Shown here in pieces: positions 1 to 47,119 of a stretch of DNA of 64,000 nt. Where the stretch lies: positions 16,665,807-16,729,806 of the forward strand of contig NC_134031.1 in the NCBI RefSeq assembly GCF_964204645.1, written 5' to 3'. This DNA is from Tubulanus polymorphus (Eukaryota; Animalia; Nemertea). The notes below the pieces were generated by a model. That model did not search any database. It had not been told where the DNA came from and saw only the letters and a list, made by a program, of their open reading frames with translations. A program made the translations under genes and the position numbers. Positions within the stretch are counted from its first letter, which is position 1, and the number at the start of each line of letters is the position of its first letter.

Positions 1-3000
1 TTTATATTGGAGCCTTCGAACACGAGTGTTTTTGCTGGACAGCCCGTGTCGTTACAGTGCTCTCCTCCGTACAGCGTTCCAGCCGCTCAAGTCGTCTGGT
101 ATAAATCGAATAATCCGTTCGCTCAGCGACCGGGAGAGTTTGCCGTCACCGTATTGAATACCGGTGATCTGTATTTCTCGAACGTTCAACAGTCCGACGA
201 AGGGATGTATTCGTGCGTCGCGTTTAATGATAAAGCAGCCCCAACCACTCGCATGTCTAGATCAGCCTGGCTTACTGTTTCTGGTAAAGATGATAGTTTG
301 CATTAATAACCATTGATGAAACACTCTGTCCATGTTGTGATGATGATGATATGAAATAGAAGAATGAAAAAATAGAGTCTGAAAAGTTTCATTGAGCTAG
401 TAGGTTATTCAATGTTTCGACTACATATTGATAGTCATCTTCAAGAATGCTGATATTATAACAAATTATGAGATATTCAATCCAGAACAAATATACTACT
501 CAAGGAAACTCTATTTTCTCAGTGTGGCATTTTATATTTTAAGTTTGCATCGAATTTGGATAGATCACCTATTTTTTATCGCCATTGATTTTATACTCGT
601 CACGTTATAGGAGGGCCGAAGATTCTGGAGCCACCGGTTCCCGTGTCGGTTATCAAAGGCAGGTTATTACGACTGAAATGTAAAGTTGACGGTGAACCAT
701 TCCCTACAGTTACATGGTTCAAGGATAGCCAAAAACTCAATCCCGATTTTCGTATAAATTTAAGGTAATTTCATCACTATCACTCGATATTTTCACCAGA
801 ACTTAAAAAATGAATTATCATGTTGATTCCTGCTGTTTCTCATTGTAGCATGCGAAATCAAGAATTACTAATCAACGTTGTCGATAAAGTTGACGAGGGA
901 ATTTACGTCTGCCAAGCGACAAATAAGTTCGGTACAAGTAAAAGTCAACCGGCGAAAGTGAATGTGATTGGTAAAATAGTCATTACGTGTATCATACTTT
1001 GAGTTGTATCAGTTTCTACTGAACGGTATTCTAAATTGATGATATGATCCCATTTCAGTACCGGTCGCTATCCTCCAGTCTGTCGCGAGTGTTACCGTCA
1101 ATGAAAGCCAACCGGCTGTTTTAAAGTGTATCGCGTATTCTGATCCGGGACCGGTCATCACCTGGTTGAAAGGTATCATTTCATACATTACTCGTATTCT
1201 GATGGTATATCCATCGATTTATTCGCATATCTTTTAATATTTCTAGATGGTCAAGTTATTACGTATACTGAACACATACAGAAAGTAGCGGAAGGCTTGT
1301 ATATAAAGAAAGCTGTCGCAGGAGATGCTGGAACGTATACCTGTCAGGTTTCCAACCCGGCTGGCATGAAAAGTTCGCATGCAGTTCTCACTGTGTACAG
1401 TAAGTTCGAAAAACGTTACGTTATATCTTGATGGCTTCCATCAACTTCATCTTGTTTAAATTGTATGAATATGTCCTTGTATTCTTTACAGCTAAACCGC
1501 AGTTTACGGAGACTTCATTGGAAAATGTTGTCAATGTTTCTGATACCGTTGTTTTATTGTGTAAAGCTAAAGGTGTTCCTGTACCTTCTATTCAGTGGTT
1601 TTATAATGTAAGTATATTGTCCTATCGTTTTAAAGATTCGTTCATTTATCTGCATTTTGTCCGCATAAAGAATACATTCTTTCTTTACAGGGCTCTAGAC
1701 TGATATTGAAAGATATGAAATTCTCGAGTAATAACTCTGTGGTAACGATCAACTCAATAAATATCCATCAAACTGGAGTTTACAAATGTATTGCCAATAA
1801 CTCATTAGGACGTGCTGAAAAATCTGGATTTCTTAAAGTTCAAGGTTAGTACATTCTTTAAATACTCTACCGATTACAGAATGTTCTTCTGGCGCCTTTG
1901 TTACGCTCTACCTATTCGGGAATAGCATAATCTGTAAACCTACTGGAAGGCCGGTAGAGATTTTGTAATCCTGTATTGCTATTCCTAGATCGGAATACGG
2001 CCTAAATTACAGAGTAGACTCATATATTCTGTTTCGAGTCCTTTTAGACACAGTTATCGTTATTCATTTTACAGTGGCTCCTGTTTTAAGATCGTTAGGT
2101 CGGCCTGGATCATTAGTCGTTAGTCGCGGTCGTAGTATAGAATTGAAGTGTCGAGGTGCCGGTATTCCAGACCCTGTTTATAGGTGGTTTCATAACGACA
2201 CCGAGATAAAACCATCGCTCGATAAGCGTGTTTCATTCCCGACGTTTAATCAGTTACTCGTGCAATTCGCTACAGAAAATGACGCTGGTAATTACAAAAA
2301 TCTTTCCGATTCACGGTTTTTATAACTGATAATTCAAATTTCTAATAAGTTTTTTCGATGTTCTATATATAAAGGTATTTACAAATGCGAAGTCACTAAT
2401 ATACTTGGTCGACAGGAACTTACAAAGATAGTTTATGTCAGAGGTAAGGCATGGTTTGATGTAATAAACATTTGGTAAAGACTTGCTTTTTGCTCAGCAA
2501 ATGTTCGAGTGAATTGATGTCTGGTTGTGGCATATATTTTTTTCCTACAGGTTTGCCGCGTCCGCCAAAACTTGAAATACCGACCCCCTTGTCGCAAAGT
2601 TCTATCAGATTAAACTGGATTCCGGCAACTCAAGCTCCACAGAATTCCGTTTTGAATTATGTGATTCAGTATTCTCCGAAGTAAGTGTTCGTGAATTGAA
2701 CGTCTTTCTGATTGAATTTATCCGTATTAAACGAGGAGTTTTGCTTTTACTTTGAAATAGAATTGGTGGAAATCCAGTGAAAATGATCGTTCCTAGTTCT
2801 GTCGTGTCGCTCAGTGTAGATAGTCTAAACACTGCAACTGAATATCTGTTCTGGATCGCTGCTCAGAATGAAGTTGGAACCGGTCAATTCACTGGCAAAC
2901 TTAAAGCGAAAACATTTGAATCCGGTAAGAATTAATAAACCTGGGCCCAGTTCCATAGTCCAAACTTATGTCCCAAATTGGTTTCTTAAGACTTGTCTTG

Positions 3001-6000
3001 TTAGATTGGCCATAAAACTAACTTGGTCTTTAGGCTTGTCTTAAGTCTAAGCCATGACTATGGAACCGGCCCTCTGGTAGTTAACCCAGTAGTTGTATTC
3101 TTGTATTACCAAAAGATTTTGTTTCAAAAGCTAACGTTCTATGGATATTGAAAGAAAAGAATGCTCCATTCCAGCTCCTACTGCACCGAGGAATTTGAAA
3201 GTGATTAAAAAGACTAAGTCTAGTTTGATGTTGGCGTGGGAAGAACCTGAATTTAAGAACGGTGATATAACCGATTATGAAGTTCAATACAGACAGCAAG
3301 GTTATACTGGTCAGTTCTACTCAACCATCAAACTGATTTATGTTTCTACTGAAATAGTTATTTAAGAATTGAAATCATCGTGCCATTATCGATTGCAGAA
3401 TTCAAACTCATCAAGATATCCAATCCAAAACTTCCATATCAGGAGCTAACAGTCGTAGAATTGAAGGCATATACGCCGTATGAATTTAAAGTTCGAGCAG
3501 CTACAATAGAACGCCAGGTTCCGATATTTGGTTCATATACACCTTTGATAAGTGATATAACTAGTATGGATGGTAAGAACCAGTAACGTAAAAATGGCTG
3601 CATTCTATGATTAAGATTATGATTATTATTACTATTATTATTATTTCTTTTTTTTAGCACCCACAGCAAGTCCTCGAAATATAAATGTAACGGTTTTAAC
3701 GAACACGTCCGTGTTTGTCTCCTGGGAGGTAAGATCTTCTGGTGATGTTGCATGATGAATTCATTTCATCACTTTTCATTTACTTTTTGATTTTGATTTA
3801 CAGCCGATCTTGTCGCAGTATCAACACGGTGCAGTGAATCTGTATAGAATCTCAGTTGAACAGATGAATCTGCCATCGACTCGCGTTGTGAAAACTGTTA
3901 AATCGACCTCGTTGAGTACGACTTTAACCGGCTTGTTGCCGTGGAGGTACTATTCGCTAACAGTCACAGGTGTCAACACGATAGGACCGAGTCCACCGAG
4001 TCCAGCCGAGATTTTCCAGACTCTTCCAGGAGGTAGGTGATTTATACCATCTCTACTTACCTGGAAATCAGGGAAAAGTCGGGGAATTTTCCTTTCTTTG
4101 TAAAAGTCCGGGAATAGTCAGCATTGTAAAAAAGCTAAAAAATTAGGGAAAAGTCATGGAAATTTGTTGAGACCGCGTGTTAAGATAAATAGTTTCCGTC
4201 TATCGAGTCAGGGCAAACACTGTGCGTATCAGGGAATAGTCAGGGAAAAGCAAGTCAGACAAAAGTGGCCACCCTGTTTCATCTGAAATTGTCAAGTTCA
4301 GTTTGTATTTTCTAATGTATGTGTGTTTATTTTTAGTACCCAGTGGGCCTCCGCAGGATATAAAACTGGGTGTCAATAAATCGTCTATTTTCGTTACTTG
4401 GAAGGTAATCTTTAAAAATCCAACAACTGAGTTGCATGATCTGATTGGTAATGGGGTTCTGCTTAATGGCTTGTTTGTTTTTGTGTAGAGATATAATAGA
4501 TTCATGAAAGGTTTTTGTGCATTTAAAAGGAAAAAGGCATCTAATACATTGCTTCTGCTTCTAACTTCGATAGATATACTGTAGTACCCCAGCAAACTTG
4601 CCCTTGTATAAGATTTATCCAGATGATTTTGAGTTTTAGAACTTTTCTGTAGTCATACAATTTTGCTACATATATCTAGTCTTAACTAGCAATGGAATCA
4701 TTACCGGTAGTTATATAGTAACCATTATAACTGGTGTTGAGTAATTCCATATTGAACTGAAATCACGAAATTGAAAAAATAACAAATTCTGAATGGATTA
4801 AAGATGATTATTGTTCTCATATAATCTCGAAAGCCTTGTATATGTATAAGCGAATGAGAATATTTCGAGAGAAAAGCATTTATCAATTGCATGTTTTTGT
4901 CGTCTGCTGATGCGAAGGAAGTATGTTTGTTATTGTGTGTTAATACATCCTACTGTAGGAAGTAGCTGATGATCAATGTAACAGTATCATTCATGGATAT
5001 ATTTTACGTTACGGTGCTGCTTGTTGTAACTGGTCTCGTCAAGTGCAAATTAACCTGACTAATCAGCTTAACTATACTATAAGGTAATCAGTTTCTTTCA
5101 ATTGTGTTGTTGATGTTGTGCGTATTAAACCCACTAAAAGTGCAGCGGAAAAATTCTAAAATATTCTTAAAGATTTTGATGAAATTTGTGGTGCCATTTG
5201 CCCCTAATTATGACAGATGCGAATGCTGCTCTTTAGGGCGTTATATGAATGTTATCGCTGTGCTTCTTGTGTTAGAACATCTTATAAGTATGTCGCATTG
5301 ATTTGATGAGCCTCTTCAATCAAGAGCGATATTCCATTATTCTGATTGTTTCATATAAGTTTCATATCGAATTACAGTGAACTGAAACCATGGACAATGT
5401 ATTGGATTGAAATACGAGCTTTCACACGGCAAATACCGGGCGGCTTCGGTCCATTCTCGCAACGTTATGAGATCCGTACTTCACAACACGGTATGTAATA
5501 AGTGCTATTAATTCATGACTGGTAGCTACTAACTTATTTGGTTATTATCTTCAGATTTGCGAAGACTCTCAGTTTAATGTACATTTCATTATGATATTTT
5601 AGTTCCCGGTCCCGTTAAGAACGTGAAGGCTACTGCGATGTCGTATTCTGCTCTAATAAGTTGGGATACCCCGGATGAAAAGAATGGTGTCATAATACAT
5701 TATATCGTCACATACGTCACTATTGGCTCCGTAGAAACAACTACTGATCGCAGTTCTACCGTCGGTAATCAAAAACAAACTTCGTCTACTCGAACTTCAG
5801 TTTCTAACTCATCTAGAAGTACCGCTATCGCGAGTAGAACAACAGGTAAGATGCAAGTTATATTGAAATTTCTTTTCTAACTGCGATCATTTGAACAAGG
5901 AATGCAGTAAACCTCGCACAAACTGGGACTGGCAAAAATTGGTCAGAAGTAAGCGAAGTCTTGAGTTAAGGACAGGAAAATATGTTAGGAAGTTAGAAAA

Positions 6001-43600: not shown

Positions 43601-44476
43601 AAGATTAGAATGTATTGTTTGTTAATGACAGTCAAATTTAAGTTATTGTTTTTAGAAAAATAAACTAAAATTCGCTGTATTTAAAACTGCTGATTTTGAA
43701 TTTACTGAGATTTATTTTCTACTGGGAAGCTGCATGAAACCTCGGTCAACTCGGACAAAATCTTCAGGACAGTTTCTATACGCACGACGTTTCTTGGTCC
43801 GACCAGGGAAGTGTGATGAGATGGAATACGGACGCTTTTAATTGCCGGATGTAGGCTATTCAATTCAGCCCGTACATCAAAGGTTACCGCAACAGCAGTA
43901 AGCTACGCTTATCGAGTGTGTGTTACCAGCTGAACACCAGTCAACATCAACTTTGATTCGGTCGCAGAACAACCCGCAATAGTTTTAGCCCGATAAATGT
44001 TCTGCGATCGATACTACGCATGCGCACTGCAGTTCATTGAACCACGTGGAAGTGGCTGTGTATAAACATATTTTTCTTTAGAAAATCGGTTGAAATTCAA
44101 CAATTTCTCGTAAAATTTGTCCAAAAAGGTATGTATTTTTATTCTTCTATATCTCCGAAACCCGGAATCGGAACATTAAGTGTTTATATTGTGATTAAAG
44201 TCTGTTTTTATGTGTTAAACATATGTTTTTGCCAGTTCGTTCCGATTCCGGGTTTAGCGTTATTTGGGCATTGAAGATGTCAAATATTTCGGCCCAGACT
44301 CGCGCAGCTTTCGTTTCTGACGTCATGTTGCTATGTTACGACACAGACATATACATGAAGTATGATCTTTAAAATGTGTATTTACTACATAATAATGTTA
44401 CTTAATAACGCTTACATTAGGCCTACAAATTATTGTCCCCCATATAAACCAAGTTGCCTAAATAGCATCAGCAATC

Positions 44477-45406
44477 TCATTTAATTAACCTTTTCTTGTT
44501 TTTAGTCATGGATCTTTGTCGATTGTGTGGAAAAAATGCGAAACCTCCGGATCGTCGTCCTATCGATAAAAATAATTTCAAAAGCCATGTGAAGGAGTTG
44601 TTCAACATTGATTTTGATGATGATACTGAACAGTACCCGATATATATCTGTAATATGTGTCGTGTCAAATTACAAAAATGGCGTAAGAACAAAAACGTTA
44701 AAAAAACTGTCCCTGTGACTATCACAACATGAAACTTTGCCCACATTTTATCCAAATCTTTCGCAGTGCTTATGTGAATGGCGGAACATAATGTATCTTG
44801 AATTTTTGTAAACCACTGGTTAATTCCAAGTCTGGACGGCGACGTATTTGTAGTCAAAATTTTATCGATCGATTTTCCATTATGTACTGCTGCCATTCCA
44901 TTTGAACTGAATTTAAATACTCGATGGTTAATCACTTCAGTCATAGCCTTTTCCAAATATATAGTGTTCCTGCGAAAATAATAATAATGATTATTATTTT
45001 AACATGTACTTATCTGGATTTTTTATATTATGTTTATATATTATTTTCTGTATTCGTTTATTATTTTATAACCTAAAAGGATTGTATTGATTATAAAAAT
45101 AAATGTAAAAAATACCTGTATGTGTGTTTTCTCGTGTTCAGATCGCAGTCTCTGGTCAGCTGAGCCTGAGAAGTACCTATATGAAAAAGAAAAGGAAAGA
45201 ATAAAGTGCCTGCAATTAGGTGGAAACTATTCCGATATTACATTGATTCAAAAGGAATAACACTCACTAGAATCGGCCGAATTAGTTGATCCTGATCCAG
45301 AGGATTCCCGTAATATTTCCGTATCGATCTGAACCAATTCGTCACTATCAAAGAATAGTTCGTCAAAATCGTCATCATTTATAATTTCGTTGACAACCGT
45401 TGCCAT
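44477..45406 (-). pseudogene. second, convergent transposon-borne spliced ORF of unknown function
   Basis: Exons 45406-45268, 45176-45116 and 44969-44477 have GT-AG borders and join in frame (phases 1 and 2): MATVVNEIINDDDFDELFFDSDEL...RKHTYR NTIYLEKAMTEVINHRVF...DKMWAKFH. Confidence 0.55.
44508..44732 (+). pseudogene. truncated transposon protein with an N-terminal C2C2 zinc finger (RAG1-N/Chapaev-like or zf-AD-like)
   Basis: MDLCRLCG..x17..VKELFNIDFDDDTEQYPIYICNMCRVKL. Preceded by a polypyrimidine-TAG acceptor (44504-44505), with an upstream donor AAG|GTATGT at 44129. Confidence 0.6.
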
Positions 45407-45520
45407 TTTAATACAGCGGAAAGAACCGATATCACGATTGATAAAACACTATATCCGTCTGAAGCGATGTAGAGAGAATCGCACAATGATAACGAAAAAG
45501 TCCAAAAATGTTAGTAGTTT

Positions 45521-45558
45521 ATTCAACGTTTCGTCTATGTCCTAATAGTCATCTTCAG
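45521..45558 (-). ncRNA. minimal type-I hammerhead motif in a Penelope-like fragment nested in the transposon
   Basis: Minus strand: CTGAAGA-T-GACTAT-taggac-ATAGAC-GAAA-CGTT-GAAT, with palindromic AACGTT stem III. Confidence 0.55.
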
Positions 45559-46116
45559 AAATAATGAATACTACAGAAATTATGAGAGATATATACAATC
45601 CAGAGACAAAGAGACTAATTCAAGTAATCAGAGATGATACAAACTAAAGGAAAATTAACGTAGAAACAGTTACACGCTAAAACAGATTAAAGAGAAGCAG
45701 TTAAGAGACAGACTAGGGGGCACTTAAATTTAAGACAATTGTGAATACAAGTTGATCGACTAAAATTGATGAGGGGAAATCAGGTGTTGAGTTTAACCAG
45801 TTTACAGAGGAATTTTTATATAAGTTTATTATGGGATGAAAAACCGATATTCGGAAACAACTGAATTATTACGGAGATTCCCGATCTCGCTGGTTATCGC
45901 TTATCGGCGCGTTACGTAACAAAGCGCTCGCCGACGAACCGTTATCGGCTTTAGGGCAATTACAACGCACATTCGACAAGAGCTGCACAATAGCGTCCGT
46001 ATTCCATCTCATCACACTTCCCTGGTCCGACTAAGTCCGAGTTGGCCGAGGTTTTCTGTATGGTATAAATTCCTTCTAAAGAAACAACAGGTATTTGAGG
46101 TCGGAGGAACTATCTA

Positions 46117-46291
46117 AAGAGGAACCTCGTTATAACTGGCTCGGATACAACGATTCATCGGATATAACAAATATAGAATTTCGTCCAAAGTAAGAAAATT
46201 TAGATTATTTCATATTGGATAACGAACTATCGGTTGTAACGAACATATTTTCTGGTCCCGTGAAGTTTGCTGTAACGAGGTTGTATTTTGG
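46117..46291. mobile_element. Tigger-like MITE (degenerate)
   Basis: GAACCTCGTTATAAC...GTAACGAGGTT ends, with internal CGGATATAAC/GTTGTAACG repeats. Confidence 0.55.
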
Positions 46292-46381
46292 TACAGTCCC
46301 GAACCACCATCCTGAAAAACTAGACGATCTTGCAAAAATGGAGAACTCGCCATGATTGCCACGGAAATTGATTAGAAGGAT

Positions 46382-46416
46382 CAGGGAAGTGTGATGTGAC
46401 TCATCACACTTCCCTG
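46382..46416. mobile_element. 35-bp TIR-only remnant (probable excision footprint) of the 43804 element family
   Basis: CAGGGAAGTGTGATGTG-A-CTCATCACACTTCCCTG, flanked by the direct 7-bp repeat GAAGGAT (46375-46381 and 46417-46423). Confidence 0.85.
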
Positions 46417-47119
46417 GAAGGATAAACTTGACAATCCGGACACATTTGCCCTCAGTGTTTGTTTGAATCACATTCCACGCATAACATTAATGAGGACACC
46501 TTGGCGAGCTCTAGTAAATGACATTTGCGGCAAATGACTAGGTTTTTAGAATTGCAGTCTGGTTCTTCTTTTCATGCAAGATTATCAAAGCGGAAAGACG
46601 CGAACGAACAACACTCGGAAACTTTAAGTGCCATATTTCCATTCAAGAGAGACGTCTGAAAAAAAATATACCGCTTTAAATAGCGCTAAAAGCACGACCT
46701 TTTATAAAATAAACACTATATAAGCTGGCTTTTGATCGTTTCCTAGACAGTACCTCGATTTTAATTCGCCGAAAGTTCATAGTGTTCAAACGGATTTTCT
46801 ATTCCAAAGAACAGCACCATAACGCCTATGAATCCCTCATTTCTTCCTCAATTTCCGCAAATTGTCATTATATAACTAGCATTCTTTAATGAGGTCATGT
46901 CTGACCGTCTACCGGTCAGCCACGCCAAACATTTATCGGAACAAGAACATCTTAAAGTAAGGACAACCTAACGTTATTGGCACGGATAACACGAATGAAA
47001 ATATTATCAGAACTTACACGTATATTCACGTTTATTCAACAACTATAAAATAACAGGTAGTTAGTTTTGAACTTAGTTTTGATAAATATATAAACAAATG
47101 TAGATGCGCAAATATAAAT

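What the first reader, a model, noticed from the sequence alone, without database searches (positions are those of the whole stretch)
43797..46031. Two-gene TIR transposon with P-element-type ends and convergent gene layout
Seen: a 2221-bp unit with perfect 33-bp TIRs and a perfect 7-bp TSD (GTCCGAC), inserted in a Tigger-like MITE. It contains two spliced genes running inward from opposite ends and meeting near 44.7 kb. Known: P-superfamily elements have ~31-bp CA...TG TIRs and 7-8-bp TSDs; the Drosophila P target consensus is GTCCGGAC and Galileo makes 7-bp TSDs. They normally encode one THAP-led transposase, whereas a convergent two-gene layout is typical of RAG transposons. Inference: this is a young internal-deletion derivative of a possibly undescribed two-gene P-like family whose lead domain is not THAP.
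Basis: partly seen in the sequence, partly recalled or inferred. Interest (0 to 1): 0.85.

Follow-up and report, generated by a model that had tools for sequence, protein, structure and literature searches.

The report
Deleted copy of split P-element transposon
This is a recently mobile, internally deleted copy of a P-element-type jumping gene whose full-length form splits its cutting enzyme between two facing genes and starts with the zinc domain that also begins the immune recombinase RAG1; I found no paper describing this design.

Summary
Window 43804-46024 is a 2221-bp element with perfect 33-bp TIRs and a 7-bp TSD (GTCCGAC). It carries two inward-facing spliced gene stubs.

It is a non-autonomous deletion derivative, equal to bases 1-908 plus 4513-5910 of a 5.9-kb element. 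That element has three full-length copies in this genome.

Gene A of the full element is a P/THAP9-type transposase:
- It has the HTH domain and an RNase H fold with the GTP-binding insertion.
- Its catalytic D, D and E align with those of the Drosophila enzyme.
- It has no THAP domain. It starts with a RAG1-NZD/ZAD-type zinc finger.
- It has no C-terminal domain (CTD).

Gene B converges on gene A and encodes a structural homologue of the Drosophila P transposase CTD (Z 12.2, 118 of 118 residues, 2.3 Å). The same gene pair recurs in at least eight diverged loci of this genome, and in echinoderms, a mussel and metagenomes.

Other support: 28 of 30 copies have perfect 7-bp TSDs, and 88 excision scars keep 13-19 nt of each end, which indicates a P-type long staggered cut.

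That the two proteins assemble is inferred, not shown. The "inserted in a Tigger-like MITE" detail is not confirmed.

This scan had already noted the same family on other DNA of this genome (s1-500292, s1-514038). I found no paper on it.

The parts
43797..43803 (.). Left copy of the 7-bp target-site duplication, GTCCGAC
   Evidence: Read directly. 28 of 30 family copies have perfect 7-bp TSDs.
43804..43836 (+). Left 33-bp terminal inverted repeat (CAGGGAAGTGTGATG...)
   Evidence: Perfect match to the right TIR; 0.00 matches expected by chance.
44050..44128 (+). Gene A 5' exon (start approximate), ending at the donor AAAAAG|GTATGT. In this copy the upstream ATG seen in full-length copies is mutated.
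   Evidence: The exon 1-exon 2 joint is seen in X4 contigs (L055 626>992). Sequence read.
44129..44505 (+). Gene A intron 1 (GT...AG, 377 nt)
44508..44732 (+). Gene A stub: 74-codon ORF for the N-terminal zinc finger (the ZFa/ZAD-like module of a RAG1-NZD-type domain). Cut off by the internal deletion after about codon 72.
   Evidence: Pfam zf-AD, 31.9 bits. Family profile hits the RAG1 NZD at E 7.9e-12. Model matches ZAD structures at Z 7.0-4.8.
44722..44724 (.). Internal deletion junction. Full-length element bases 909-4512 (3.6 kb) are missing: most of gene A and the CTD-coding part of gene B.
   Evidence: blastn of the window element against L054. The same junction appears in X4 contigs (L055 1209>4816).
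44725..44969 (-). Gene B exon 3 stub. The ATG used by homologues lies at 44944-44942. Only about the first 73-78 codons remain. The frame then runs on through antisense gene A sequence to a stop at 44477-44479.
45116..45176 (-). Gene B exon 2 (61 nt)
   Evidence: Splice sites read. It is in frame with exons 1 and 3 in this copy.
45268..45406 (-). Gene B exon 1: ATG at 45406, acidic N-terminal extension. It is in frame in this copy but frameshifted by a 4-nt difference in the three full-length copies.
   Evidence: The intron joint L055 5264>5356 (CT..AC) is seen in X4.
45992..46024 (-). Right 33-bp terminal inverted repeat
46025..46031 (.). Right copy of the 7-bp target-site duplication, GTCCGAC
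46382..46416 (.). Excision scar of the same family: 15 nt of the left end, then TGA, then 17 nt of the right end. It is flanked by a 7-bp duplication, GAAGGAT (46375-46381 and 46417-46423).
   Evidence: It is one of 88 such scars in the genome; the reversed-pattern control gave 0.

Best explanation
**What it is.** The window holds a non-autonomous, internally deleted copy of a 5.9-kb cut-and-paste DNA transposon of the P superfamily. It retains the parts needed in cis: the 33-bp TIRs, the subterminal DNA and both promoter-proximal gene stubs. It is mobilised in trans by the few full-length copies.

**The autonomous element has two convergent genes.**
- Gene A is about 870-880 aa, in five coding exons plus a 5' exon. 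It is a P/THAP9-type transposase with this order of domains: an N-terminal RAG1-NZD/ZAD-type zinc finger in place of THAP, a coiled region, the P-type HTH, and an RNase H fold split by the GTP-binding insertion. It ends about 50 residues after the RNase H domain and has no C-terminal domain.
- Gene B has a core of about 327 aa in one exon. It is all-helical, and its residues 136-305 are a homologue of the P transposase C-terminal domain. It ends in a conserved basic tail.

**Inferred mechanism.**
[quoted passage not shown] The active enzyme would therefore be a two-protein assembly.
- The enzyme cuts the non-transferred strand about 17-19 nt inside each TIR. This leaves long 3' overhangs on the donor, which are joined through microhomology into 26-37-bp palindromic scars.
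- It inserts with a 7-bp stagger into a palindromic target, TTnnTnnnAnnAA.

**Shown:** the anatomy, the homologies, the copy structure, the TSDs, the scars, the target motif and the conserved gene pairing.
**Inferred:** physical assembly of A and B, the exact cut position, and GTP dependence.
For: **Family copies and ends.**
- The genome holds at least 11 copies of the 2221-bp form at 99-100% identity and at least 30 of a roughly 2156-bp form.
- It holds three full-length copies of 5910, 5910 and 5511 bp.
- 28 of 30 bounded copies have a perfect 7-bp TSD.

**Gene A is a P-type transposase.**
- Pfam: TNP-like_RNaseH_N at E 2.4e-26, Tnp_P_element HTH, TNP-like_GBD and RNaseH_C.
- phmmer hits 6p5a_A at E 1.8e-7, and the catalytic residues align with D230 and D303. 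Exon 6 aligns with E531.
- No CTD is present in gene A or in its 865-aa relative P0172, whose alignment to the Drosophila enzyme ends at residue 835.

**Gene B is a CTD homologue.**
- The AF2 model has pLDDT 85.8.
- The best of 48,161 PDB chains is 6p5a_B, which is residues 617-734 of the Drosophila P transposase CTD: Z 12.2, rmsd 2.3 Å, 118 of 118 residues aligned, 21% identity. The next hit has Z 7.0. Foldseek gives probability 0.97 for the same chain.
- hhalign of the gene B family against a canonical THAP-bearing P transposase aligns gene B 143-324 with residues 694-872 of 879 (probability 79%, E 1.6e-5).
- Several members give faint Tnp_P_element_C or THAP9_C hits.

**The pairing is conserved.** The convergent A/B arrangement is seen in:
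- L057/L058, a metagenome contig with 33% identity;
- Anneissia;
- L062;
- Apostichopus;
- Mytilus, by tblastn;
- at least 8 diverged loci of this genome, at 29-64% identity.

**Excision scars.** The genome has 88 scars against 0 for the control. Every scar I parsed keeps 13-19 nt of each end (one keeps 20), although up to about 28 nt per end would have been detectable. The Drosophila P element is known for a 17-nt staggered cut (PMC7776569).

**Target.** The insertion sites show a palindromic preference.

**Transcripts.** Contigs in run X4 carry spliced joints from both genes.
Against: - No direct evidence shows that A and B bind. The one complex prediction gave no verdict.
- The sequence-level link of gene B to the CTD is modest (hhalign 79%; Pfam hits below threshold). 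The case rests mainly on a predicted structure.
- The type of run X4 is not on record, so calling its joints 'RNA' is an inference from the splice-like ends.
- Of the three full-length copies, one has a gene A frameshift (C8) and one a deletion in gene B (C4). The C6 copy has open ORFs but no TSD. Its splice model was not fully verified and its exons were never joined into one protein.
- The GBD match of this element's own exon is weak (E about 1e-3), though it is strong in relatives.
- The cut position comes from repaired scars, not from cleavage products.
Confidence: 0.8

Rival explanations
1. Gene B is a regulator (repressor or host-interaction factor), not a catalytic subunit. It would derive from a duplicated CTD. 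Gene A would transpose alone, and gene B would tune or restrain it, as the truncated 66-kDa and KP proteins do for the Drosophila P element.
For: - Some gene B homologues carry PHD or C2H2 fingers, which suggests chromatin reading.
- Gene B has an extra helical N-terminal half of about 135 aa with no counterpart in the P CTD.
- No binding was demonstrated.
Against: - Gene A and its relatives uniformly lack a CTD of their own.
- In Drosophila the CTD contacts transposon and target DNA inside the transpososome (PMC7776569).
- The pairing persists down to 29-33% identity, across phyla and across many families within one genome. That fits an essential part better than an optional regulator.
Confidence: 0.12
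2. The second gene is passenger or captured host DNA, or the two-gene appearance is an artefact of nested insertion of two unrelated elements.
For: DNA transposons often capture host fragments. The window copy itself carries only stubs of both genes.
Against: - Both genes lie inside one pair of TIRs with a single TSD in independent full-length copies.
- The pair recurs in distant animals.
- Gene B is homologous to a transposase domain, not to a host gene.
- No internal TIRs or TSDs of a second element were found.
Confidence: 0.03
3. The element belongs to hAT or to the Transib/RAG/Chapaev group rather than to P. The reasons would be its CAG-type ends, its RAG1-like N-terminal domain and its convergent gene layout.
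For: - The TIRs start with CAGGG, as in Ac-like hAT elements.
- The N-terminal domain matches the RAG1 NZD.
- The convergent layout recalls RAG1L/RAG2L.
Against: - The catalytic region matches only P/THAP9 families and the Drosophila P transposase.
- The TSD is 7 bp, not 8 (hAT) or 5 (Transib/RAG).
- The scars retain transposon ends. Hairpin-on-flank mechanisms (hAT, Transib, RAG) do not leave such scars (this mechanistic contrast is from general knowledge).
- No hAT dimerisation, RAG1-core or kelch hits were found.
Confidence: 0.02

Closest known systems
Drosophila P element / THAP9 (P superfamily; structures 6P5A and 6PE2)
   Same: - HTH domain, and an RNase H fold split by the GTP-binding insertion.
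- Catalytic D, D and E.
- TIRs of about 31-33 bp and TSDs of 7-8 bp.
- A palindromic target preference centred on the TSD.
- Excision scars that keep up to about 17-19 nt of each end, in line with the 17-nt staggered cut (PMC7776569).
- Amplified internal-deletion derivatives.
   Different: - No THAP domain; the N-terminus is an NZD/ZAD-type zinc finger.
- The CTD is not part of the transposase. It is encoded by a separate, convergent gene that also has an extra N-terminal helical half.
- The TSD is 7 bp, as in Galileo and 1360, rather than 8 bp.
[quoted passage not shown]
   Same: - The gene A clade's N-terminal profile hits the RAG1 NZD at E 7.9e-12, and RAG1 residues 101-225 at E 4.5e-7.
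- All ligand positions line up: H, CxxC, CxxC, H-x3-4-CxxC.
- 10 of 14 members pass or approach Pfam RAG1_imp_bd.
   Different: - The catalytic core is P-type, not Transib, RAG1 or Chapaev.
- The published literature states that this domain is found only in RAG1/RAG1L and Chapaev (PMC4411706; bioRxiv 10.64898/2026.01.24.700457).
- In this particular element only the ZFa module is clearly intact; the ZFb ligands are altered.
- I could not read Panchin & Moroz 2008, so I could not test whether N-RAG-TP is a member of this family.
ZAD (zinc-finger-associated domain, Pfam PF07776)
   Same: - Pfam zf-AD scores 27-32 bits.
- The model of residues 1-67 matches six ZAD crystal structures first (Z 7.0-4.8, about 63 residues, 2.4-3.0 Å) before dropping to Z 3.4.
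   Different: - It sits on a transposase, not on a C2H2 array.
- Relatives add a second zinc site (ZFb) that ZADs lack.
- The family profile scores RAG1 NZD far better than any ZAD.
Two-gene DNA transposons: RAG-like (RAG1L/RAG2L), PIF/Harbinger (transposase plus Myb-like protein), MuDR (mudrA/mudrB)
   Same: Two genes lie inside one pair of TIRs. As in RAGL and MuDR, they are convergent.
   Different: Here the second gene is a detached domain of the transposase itself, the P CTD. It is not an unrelated accessory protein such as a kelch/PHD protein, a Myb-like protein or MURB.

Membership tests
P superfamily (P element / THAP9) | [quoted passage not shown] | tested here: met
   Pfam, exon by exon on L054: TNP-like_RNaseH_N 93 bits, Tnp_P_element HTH 20.7 bits, TNP-like_GBD 20 bits, RNaseH_C 22 bits. 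The relative P0172 scores 96.5, 53.7 and 32.9 bits. phmmer to 6p5a_A gives E 1.8e-7, and 1.5e-16 for P0172.
P superfamily (P element / THAP9) | Catalytic acidic triad equivalent to Drosophila D230, D303 and E531 | tested here: met
   The FDEM and VSDG motifs align with D230 and D303. LEEHF aligns with E531.
P superfamily (P element / THAP9) | TIRs of about 31 bp and 7-8-bp TSDs | tested here: met
   Perfect 33-bp TIRs. A 7-bp TSD in 28 of 30 copies.
P superfamily (P element / THAP9) | Long (17-nt) staggered donor cleavage that leaves TIR-derived scars | tested here: met
   Indirect. 88 genomic scars against 0 for the control retain 13-19 nt (one 20) of each end, with microhomology junctions. 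The cleavage itself was not assayed.
P superfamily (P element / THAP9) | [quoted passage not shown] | tested here: not met
   No THAP hit in gene A or its close relatives; the N-terminus is an NZD/ZAD-type zinc finger. THAP is typical of the superfamily but is not its catalytic definition.
P superfamily (P element / THAP9) | C-terminal domain (Tnp_P_element_C / THAP9_C) fused to the transposase | tested here: not met
   Gene A stops about 50 aa after RNaseH_C. A CTD homologue is encoded by the separate gene B.
RAG-like / Transib transposons | Transib/RAG1 core transposase, RAG2-like kelch partner, 5-bp TSD | tested here: not met
   No RAG1-core or kelch hits. The TSD is 7 bp. Only the N-terminal zinc domain and the convergent layout resemble RAG.
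Chapaev (CMC) transposons | Chapaev-type catalytic core following a Chapa/NZD domain | tested here: not met
   An NZD-like domain is present, but the core is P-type.
hAT superfamily | 8-bp TSD, hAT transposase with the C-terminal hAT dimerisation domain | tested here: not met
   The TSD is 7 bp and never 8. There are no hAT family hits.
RAG1 NZD / Chapa zinc-finger domain | Two interleaved zinc sites: ZFa (CxxC...CxxC) and ZFb (an N-terminal His plus H...CxxC) | tested here: inconclusive
   Met in relatives by sequence: all ligands align to RAG1 101-225. In this element ZFa is intact and ZAD-like in the model. The C-terminal H-CxxC is replaced by CC-x7-C and is modelled at pLDDT about 56. A candidate N-terminal His lies in the 5' exon. 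Zinc stoichiometry cannot be tested with these tools.

The most novel reading that the evidence does not exclude
This lineage would be an obligate two-subunit P transposase, with the catalytic core encoded by one gene and the DNA-holding CTD by the other. Its N-terminal zinc domain would be orthologous to the RAG1 NZD. In that case the enigmatic molluscan 'N-RAG-TP' is a member of this family, and a P-type element rather than a Chapaev element donated, or shares the source of, the N-terminus of RAG1.
Probability: 0.2. Interest if true: 0.9.

Novelty: new variant of a known kind. Interest (0 to 1): 0.75.

Why it matters
1. P-element transposition is a textbook single-protein system. A widespread natural lineage that encodes the CTD separately would be a ready-made dissection of what that domain does in the transpososome. 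It would also be a new example of a heteromeric eukaryotic transposase.

2. The RAG1 N-terminal zinc domain has been reported only from RAG1/RAG1L and Chapaev transposases, and its origin is an open question. Finding it at the head of P-type transposases, in forms that range from ZAD-like single-zinc to the full two-zinc ligand set, gives a third lineage. These forms are candidates for the intermediates that the 2026 NZD structure paper postulated.

3. The family in this genome is young: some copies are 100% identical, there are 88 scars, and one full-length copy has both genes open. It is therefore a practical source of material for transposition assays.

Tried and rejected
- **Complex prediction.** I submitted P0172 residues 330-865 with P0003 residues 200-460, a near-cognate sea-cucumber pair. 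The result was no verdict: score 0.00, folded without alignments, and the partner's own fold was uncertain. This is evidence neither for nor against binding.
- **Sequence profile of gene B against PDB sequences.** It returned only designed helical repeats at E above 0.09. The CTD link appears only through structure and hhalign.
- **Pfam on gene B.** No family passed threshold.
- **RNA evidence.** No run is on record as RNA. I had only Logan contigs, so starts, ends, strand and expression level cannot be given.
- **Panchin & Moroz 2008 (N-RAG-TP).** The paper is not held, by DOI or by PMC id.
- **Literature searches.** Searches for a two-gene or split P element, or for a Chapa/NZD domain on P transposases, found nothing.
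- **Naive positional identity among the 2221-bp copies.** The figure was meaningless because of indels and orientation. I use the BLAST identities instead.
- **Fetching scar loci.** The TSD around a scar is verified only for the window's own scar.
- **TTATCG/CGATAA subterminal motifs as binding sites.** Counts were low and asymmetric, so I did not pursue them.
- **Joined protein.** Gene A's exons were searched one by one by reference.
Full report
**1. The observation**

The TIRs start CAGGGAAGTGTGATG... and are perfect over 33 bp (43804-43836 and 45992-46024). The heptamer GTCCGAC flanks both ends. The 32-mer occurs exactly twice in the window, against 0.00 expected.

The own genome, G000, has 268 Mb in 77 contigs. 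Earlier notes of this scan call it the ribbon worm Tubulanus polymorphus; I did not test that. The genome holds:
- at least 11 copies of this 2221-bp form at 99-100% identity, three of them at about 100%;
- at least 30 copies of a sister form of about 2156 bp, in which 82 bp are replaced by 17 bp.

Of 30 bounded copies, 28 have a perfect 7-bp TSD and none has 8 bp.

One detail is not confirmed: the claimed host 'Tigger-like MITE'.
- The 104 bp to the left of the insertion are single-copy.
- The only high-copy repeat nearby (about 170 bp, at least 984 candidates) lies at 46114-46282, outside the insertion site.
- A 20-nt inverted repeat does bracket the site.

**2. The full-length element**

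A protein search with the minus-strand stub found three longer copies.

| Copy | Locus and position | Length | TSD | State |
|---|---|---|---|---|
| C6 | L054, 304-6213 | 5910 bp | none; flanks differ | both genes open |
| C8 | L055, 302-6211 | 5910 bp | CTCGAAT | 1-nt frameshift in gene A |
| C4 | L056, 3726-9236 | 5511 bp | GTTCTAG | 399-bp deletion in gene B |

The window copy equals bases 1-908 plus 4513-5910 of the full element. Identity to the full-length copies is 92.7-99.3%, depending on the segment. It is therefore a deletion derivative that has since amplified as its own lineage. The junction lies at about window 44722-44724. The same junction appears in public contigs.

**3. Gene A**

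I searched gene A exon by exon by reference.
- The 613-aa first coding exon of L054 carries a zinc finger at residues 3-60, the P-type HTH at 344-390 and TNP-like_RNaseH_N at 400-544 (E 2.4e-26).
- Later exons carry the GBD and RNaseH_C.
- phmmer hits the Drosophila P transposase directly (6p5a_A, E 1.8e-7). FDEM aligns with D230 and VSDG with D303. The last exon aligns LEEHF with E531.
- The protein ends about 50 residues after RNaseH_C, with an NLS-like PRKRKR motif. There is no C-terminal domain.
- The same is true of annotated relatives of about 865 aa in echinoderms and amphioxus.

**4. Gene B**

The 331-aa main exon has no Pfam family. It nevertheless belongs to a large uncharacterised family: 1129 representative clusters at E ≤ 1e-3. 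Members occur in sea cucumber, feather star, acorn worm, mussel and many metagenomes.

An AF2 model built on 40 homologues (pLDDT 85.8, all-helical) was aligned to 48,161 PDB chains.
- The top hit is 6p5a_B, which is residues 617-734 of the Drosophila P transposase, that is, its CTD. The scores are Z 12.2, rmsd 2.3 Å and 118 of 118 residues aligned. The next hit has Z 7.0.
- Foldseek gives probability 0.97 for the same chain.
- hhalign of the family against a canonical THAP-bearing P transposase aligns gene B residues 143-324 with residues 694-872 of 879 (probability 79%, E 1.6e-5).
- Faint Tnp_P_element_C and THAP9_C hits fall on the same stretch.
- The family ends in a conserved basic tail (consensus SKKGEKxLRKxL). 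This recalls the basic C-terminal tail that points at target DNA in the Drosophila complex (PMC7776569).

In the window copy three exons are in frame (45406-45268, 45176-45116, 44969 onwards). In the three full-length copies a 4-nt difference takes exon 1 out of frame. There the protein probably starts at the ATG in exon 3, where most homologues start.

**5. The pairing is conserved**

Gene B followed by a convergent CTD-less P transposase is seen in the following places:
- a metagenome contig at 33% identity (L057/L058);
- Anneissia japonica;
- contig L062;
- Apostichopus japonicus;
- Mytilus coruscus, where the transposase is unannotated but found by tblastn;
- at least eight further loci of this genome, at 29-64% identity.

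This co-inheritance, together with the absence of a CTD in gene A, is the main argument that gene B supplies the CTD in trans. Physical binding is not shown. The single complex prediction gave no verdict.

**6. Mechanistic traces in the genome**

*Excision scars.* The pattern 'left 13 nt, N0-30, right 13 nt' occurs at 88 sites. The reversed control occurs at 0.
- One site is in the window (46382-46416), flanked by the 7-bp duplication GAAGGAT.
- In the roughly 50 listed sites each end keeps 13-19 nt, once 20 nt. Up to about 28 nt per end would have been detectable.
- The recurrent 36-nt form is 19 + 19 nt overlapping by the palindromic AT. Many other forms overlap by 1-2 nt.
- This is what end-joining of two long TIR-derived 3' overhangs produces. 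It fits the unusual 17-nt staggered cut of the Drosophila P element (PMC7776569).
- Hairpin-forming transposases (hAT, Transib/RAG) do not leave transposon ends behind. This contrast is from general knowledge.

*Target preference.* The 28 insertion sites show a palindromic preference, TTnnTnnnAnnAA, centred on the TSD. Position -2 is T in 24 of 28 sites and position +10 is A in 26 of 28.

**7. The N-terminal domain**

- This element's first 60 residues pass Pfam zf-AD.
- Its model matches six ZAD crystal structures first (Z 7.0-4.8) and nothing else above Z 3.4.
[quoted passage not shown] The best ZAD scores only 1.4e-3.
- The RAG1 ligand set aligns: His, CxxC, CxxC, His-x3-4-CxxC.
- 10 of 14 members hit Pfam RAG1_imp_bd.
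- In this element the second zinc site looks altered. A candidate N-terminal His sits in the spliced 5' exon.

The literature states that this domain occurs in no transposable elements other than RAG-like and Chapaev ones (PMC4411706). It also states that Chapaev is the only other lineage retaining it, and postulates a ZAD-like single-zinc ancestor (bioRxiv 10.64898/2026.01.24.700457).

**8. Comparison and novelty**

By its catalytic core, TIRs, TSDs and scars the element is a member of the P superfamily. It departs from every described P element in two defining accessory features: it has no THAP domain, and its CTD is on a separate gene. It is not a RAG/Transib, Chapaev or hAT element.

Five literature searches found no description of a split P transposase or of an NZD-bearing P transposase. 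I could not read the N-RAG-TP paper.

After I had reached this reading, the scan's own notes showed that other agents had described the same family and the same idea on other DNA of this genome (s1-500292, s1-514038, s1-513930, s1-526822, s1-526884). My results agree with them. My searches of the scan's notes for excision scars found nothing; this report gives the scar census, the target motif, the TSD statistics, the exact deletion map and the count of autonomous copies.

**9. Verdict**

- I rate the finding a new variant of a known kind.
- The two-subunit mechanism is likely but untested.

Noticed in passing
window 46375-46423: A 35-bp palindromic excision scar of the same transposon family (15 nt of the left end, TGA, 17 nt of the right end). 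It sits between two copies of GAAGGAT, 351 bp from the element. This shows that a second copy once sat here and left.
   Followed up: yes
window 46114-46282: A repeat of about 170 bp with at least 984 candidate copies in the genome at 83-89% identity. It ends in ...CGAGGTTGTATTTTGGTACAG, which looks like a Tc1/mariner- or pogo-type MITE end.
   Followed up: partly
window 43737-43756 and 46035-46054: A 20-nt inverted repeat (95% complementary) brackets the insertion site. The left flank is single-copy in the genome, so its origin is unexplained; it could be an old degraded element or a local hairpin.
   Followed up: partly
L054 304-6213 (G000 C6:18193703-18199612): The only full-length copy with both genes open has no TSD; its flanks are CTTGGAT and TTTAAAC. 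That would fit recombination between two copies or a transposon-mediated rearrangement.
   Followed up: no
L054/L055 element coordinates 5358-5507 and 5501-5651: A tandem duplication of about 150 bp (96.7% identical) lies in the gene B promoter-proximal region of the full-length copies. The region aligns differently in the 2.2-kb derivatives.
   Followed up: no
window 45268-45406 versus L054 5361-5495: Gene B's acidic first exon is in frame with exons 2 and 3 in the non-autonomous window copy. All three full-length copies are out of frame there because of a 4-nt difference. It is unclear whether this exon acts as an N-terminal extension or as a uORF.
   Followed up: partly
window 44508-44732 (and the same ORF in sister copies): The amplified deletion derivatives keep an open 74-codon ORF for the zinc finger alone, behind an intact 5' exon and intron. 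This recalls the Drosophila KP and type II repressor elements, which encode only the DNA-binding N-terminus. It may simply reflect the youth of the copies.
   Followed up: no
G000 C5:14178912-14181287, C7:12765759-12768136, C1:18512013-18514344, C2:10540491-10546220, C3:14261223-14263481, C3:13543277-13545253, C12:11201546-11203828, C9:8279146-8280717: At least eight further, diverged split-P loci (29-64% protein identity to this family), each with gene A-like and gene B-like matches on opposite strands pointing inward. The genome therefore hosts several families of this design.
   Followed up: partly
P0008 (Anneissia japonica), plus 3 other members of alignment A1: Some gene B homologues carry a PHD finger in front of the CTD-like domain, and one carries C2H2 fingers. 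This echoes the PHD finger of RAG2, but no homology is implied.
   Followed up: no
window 43909, 43991, 45894, 45901, 45942: TTATCG/CGATAA hexamers cluster in both subterminal regions of the element (three within 50 bp near the right end). They may be transposase-binding sites, but the counts are too low to judge.
   Followed up: partly
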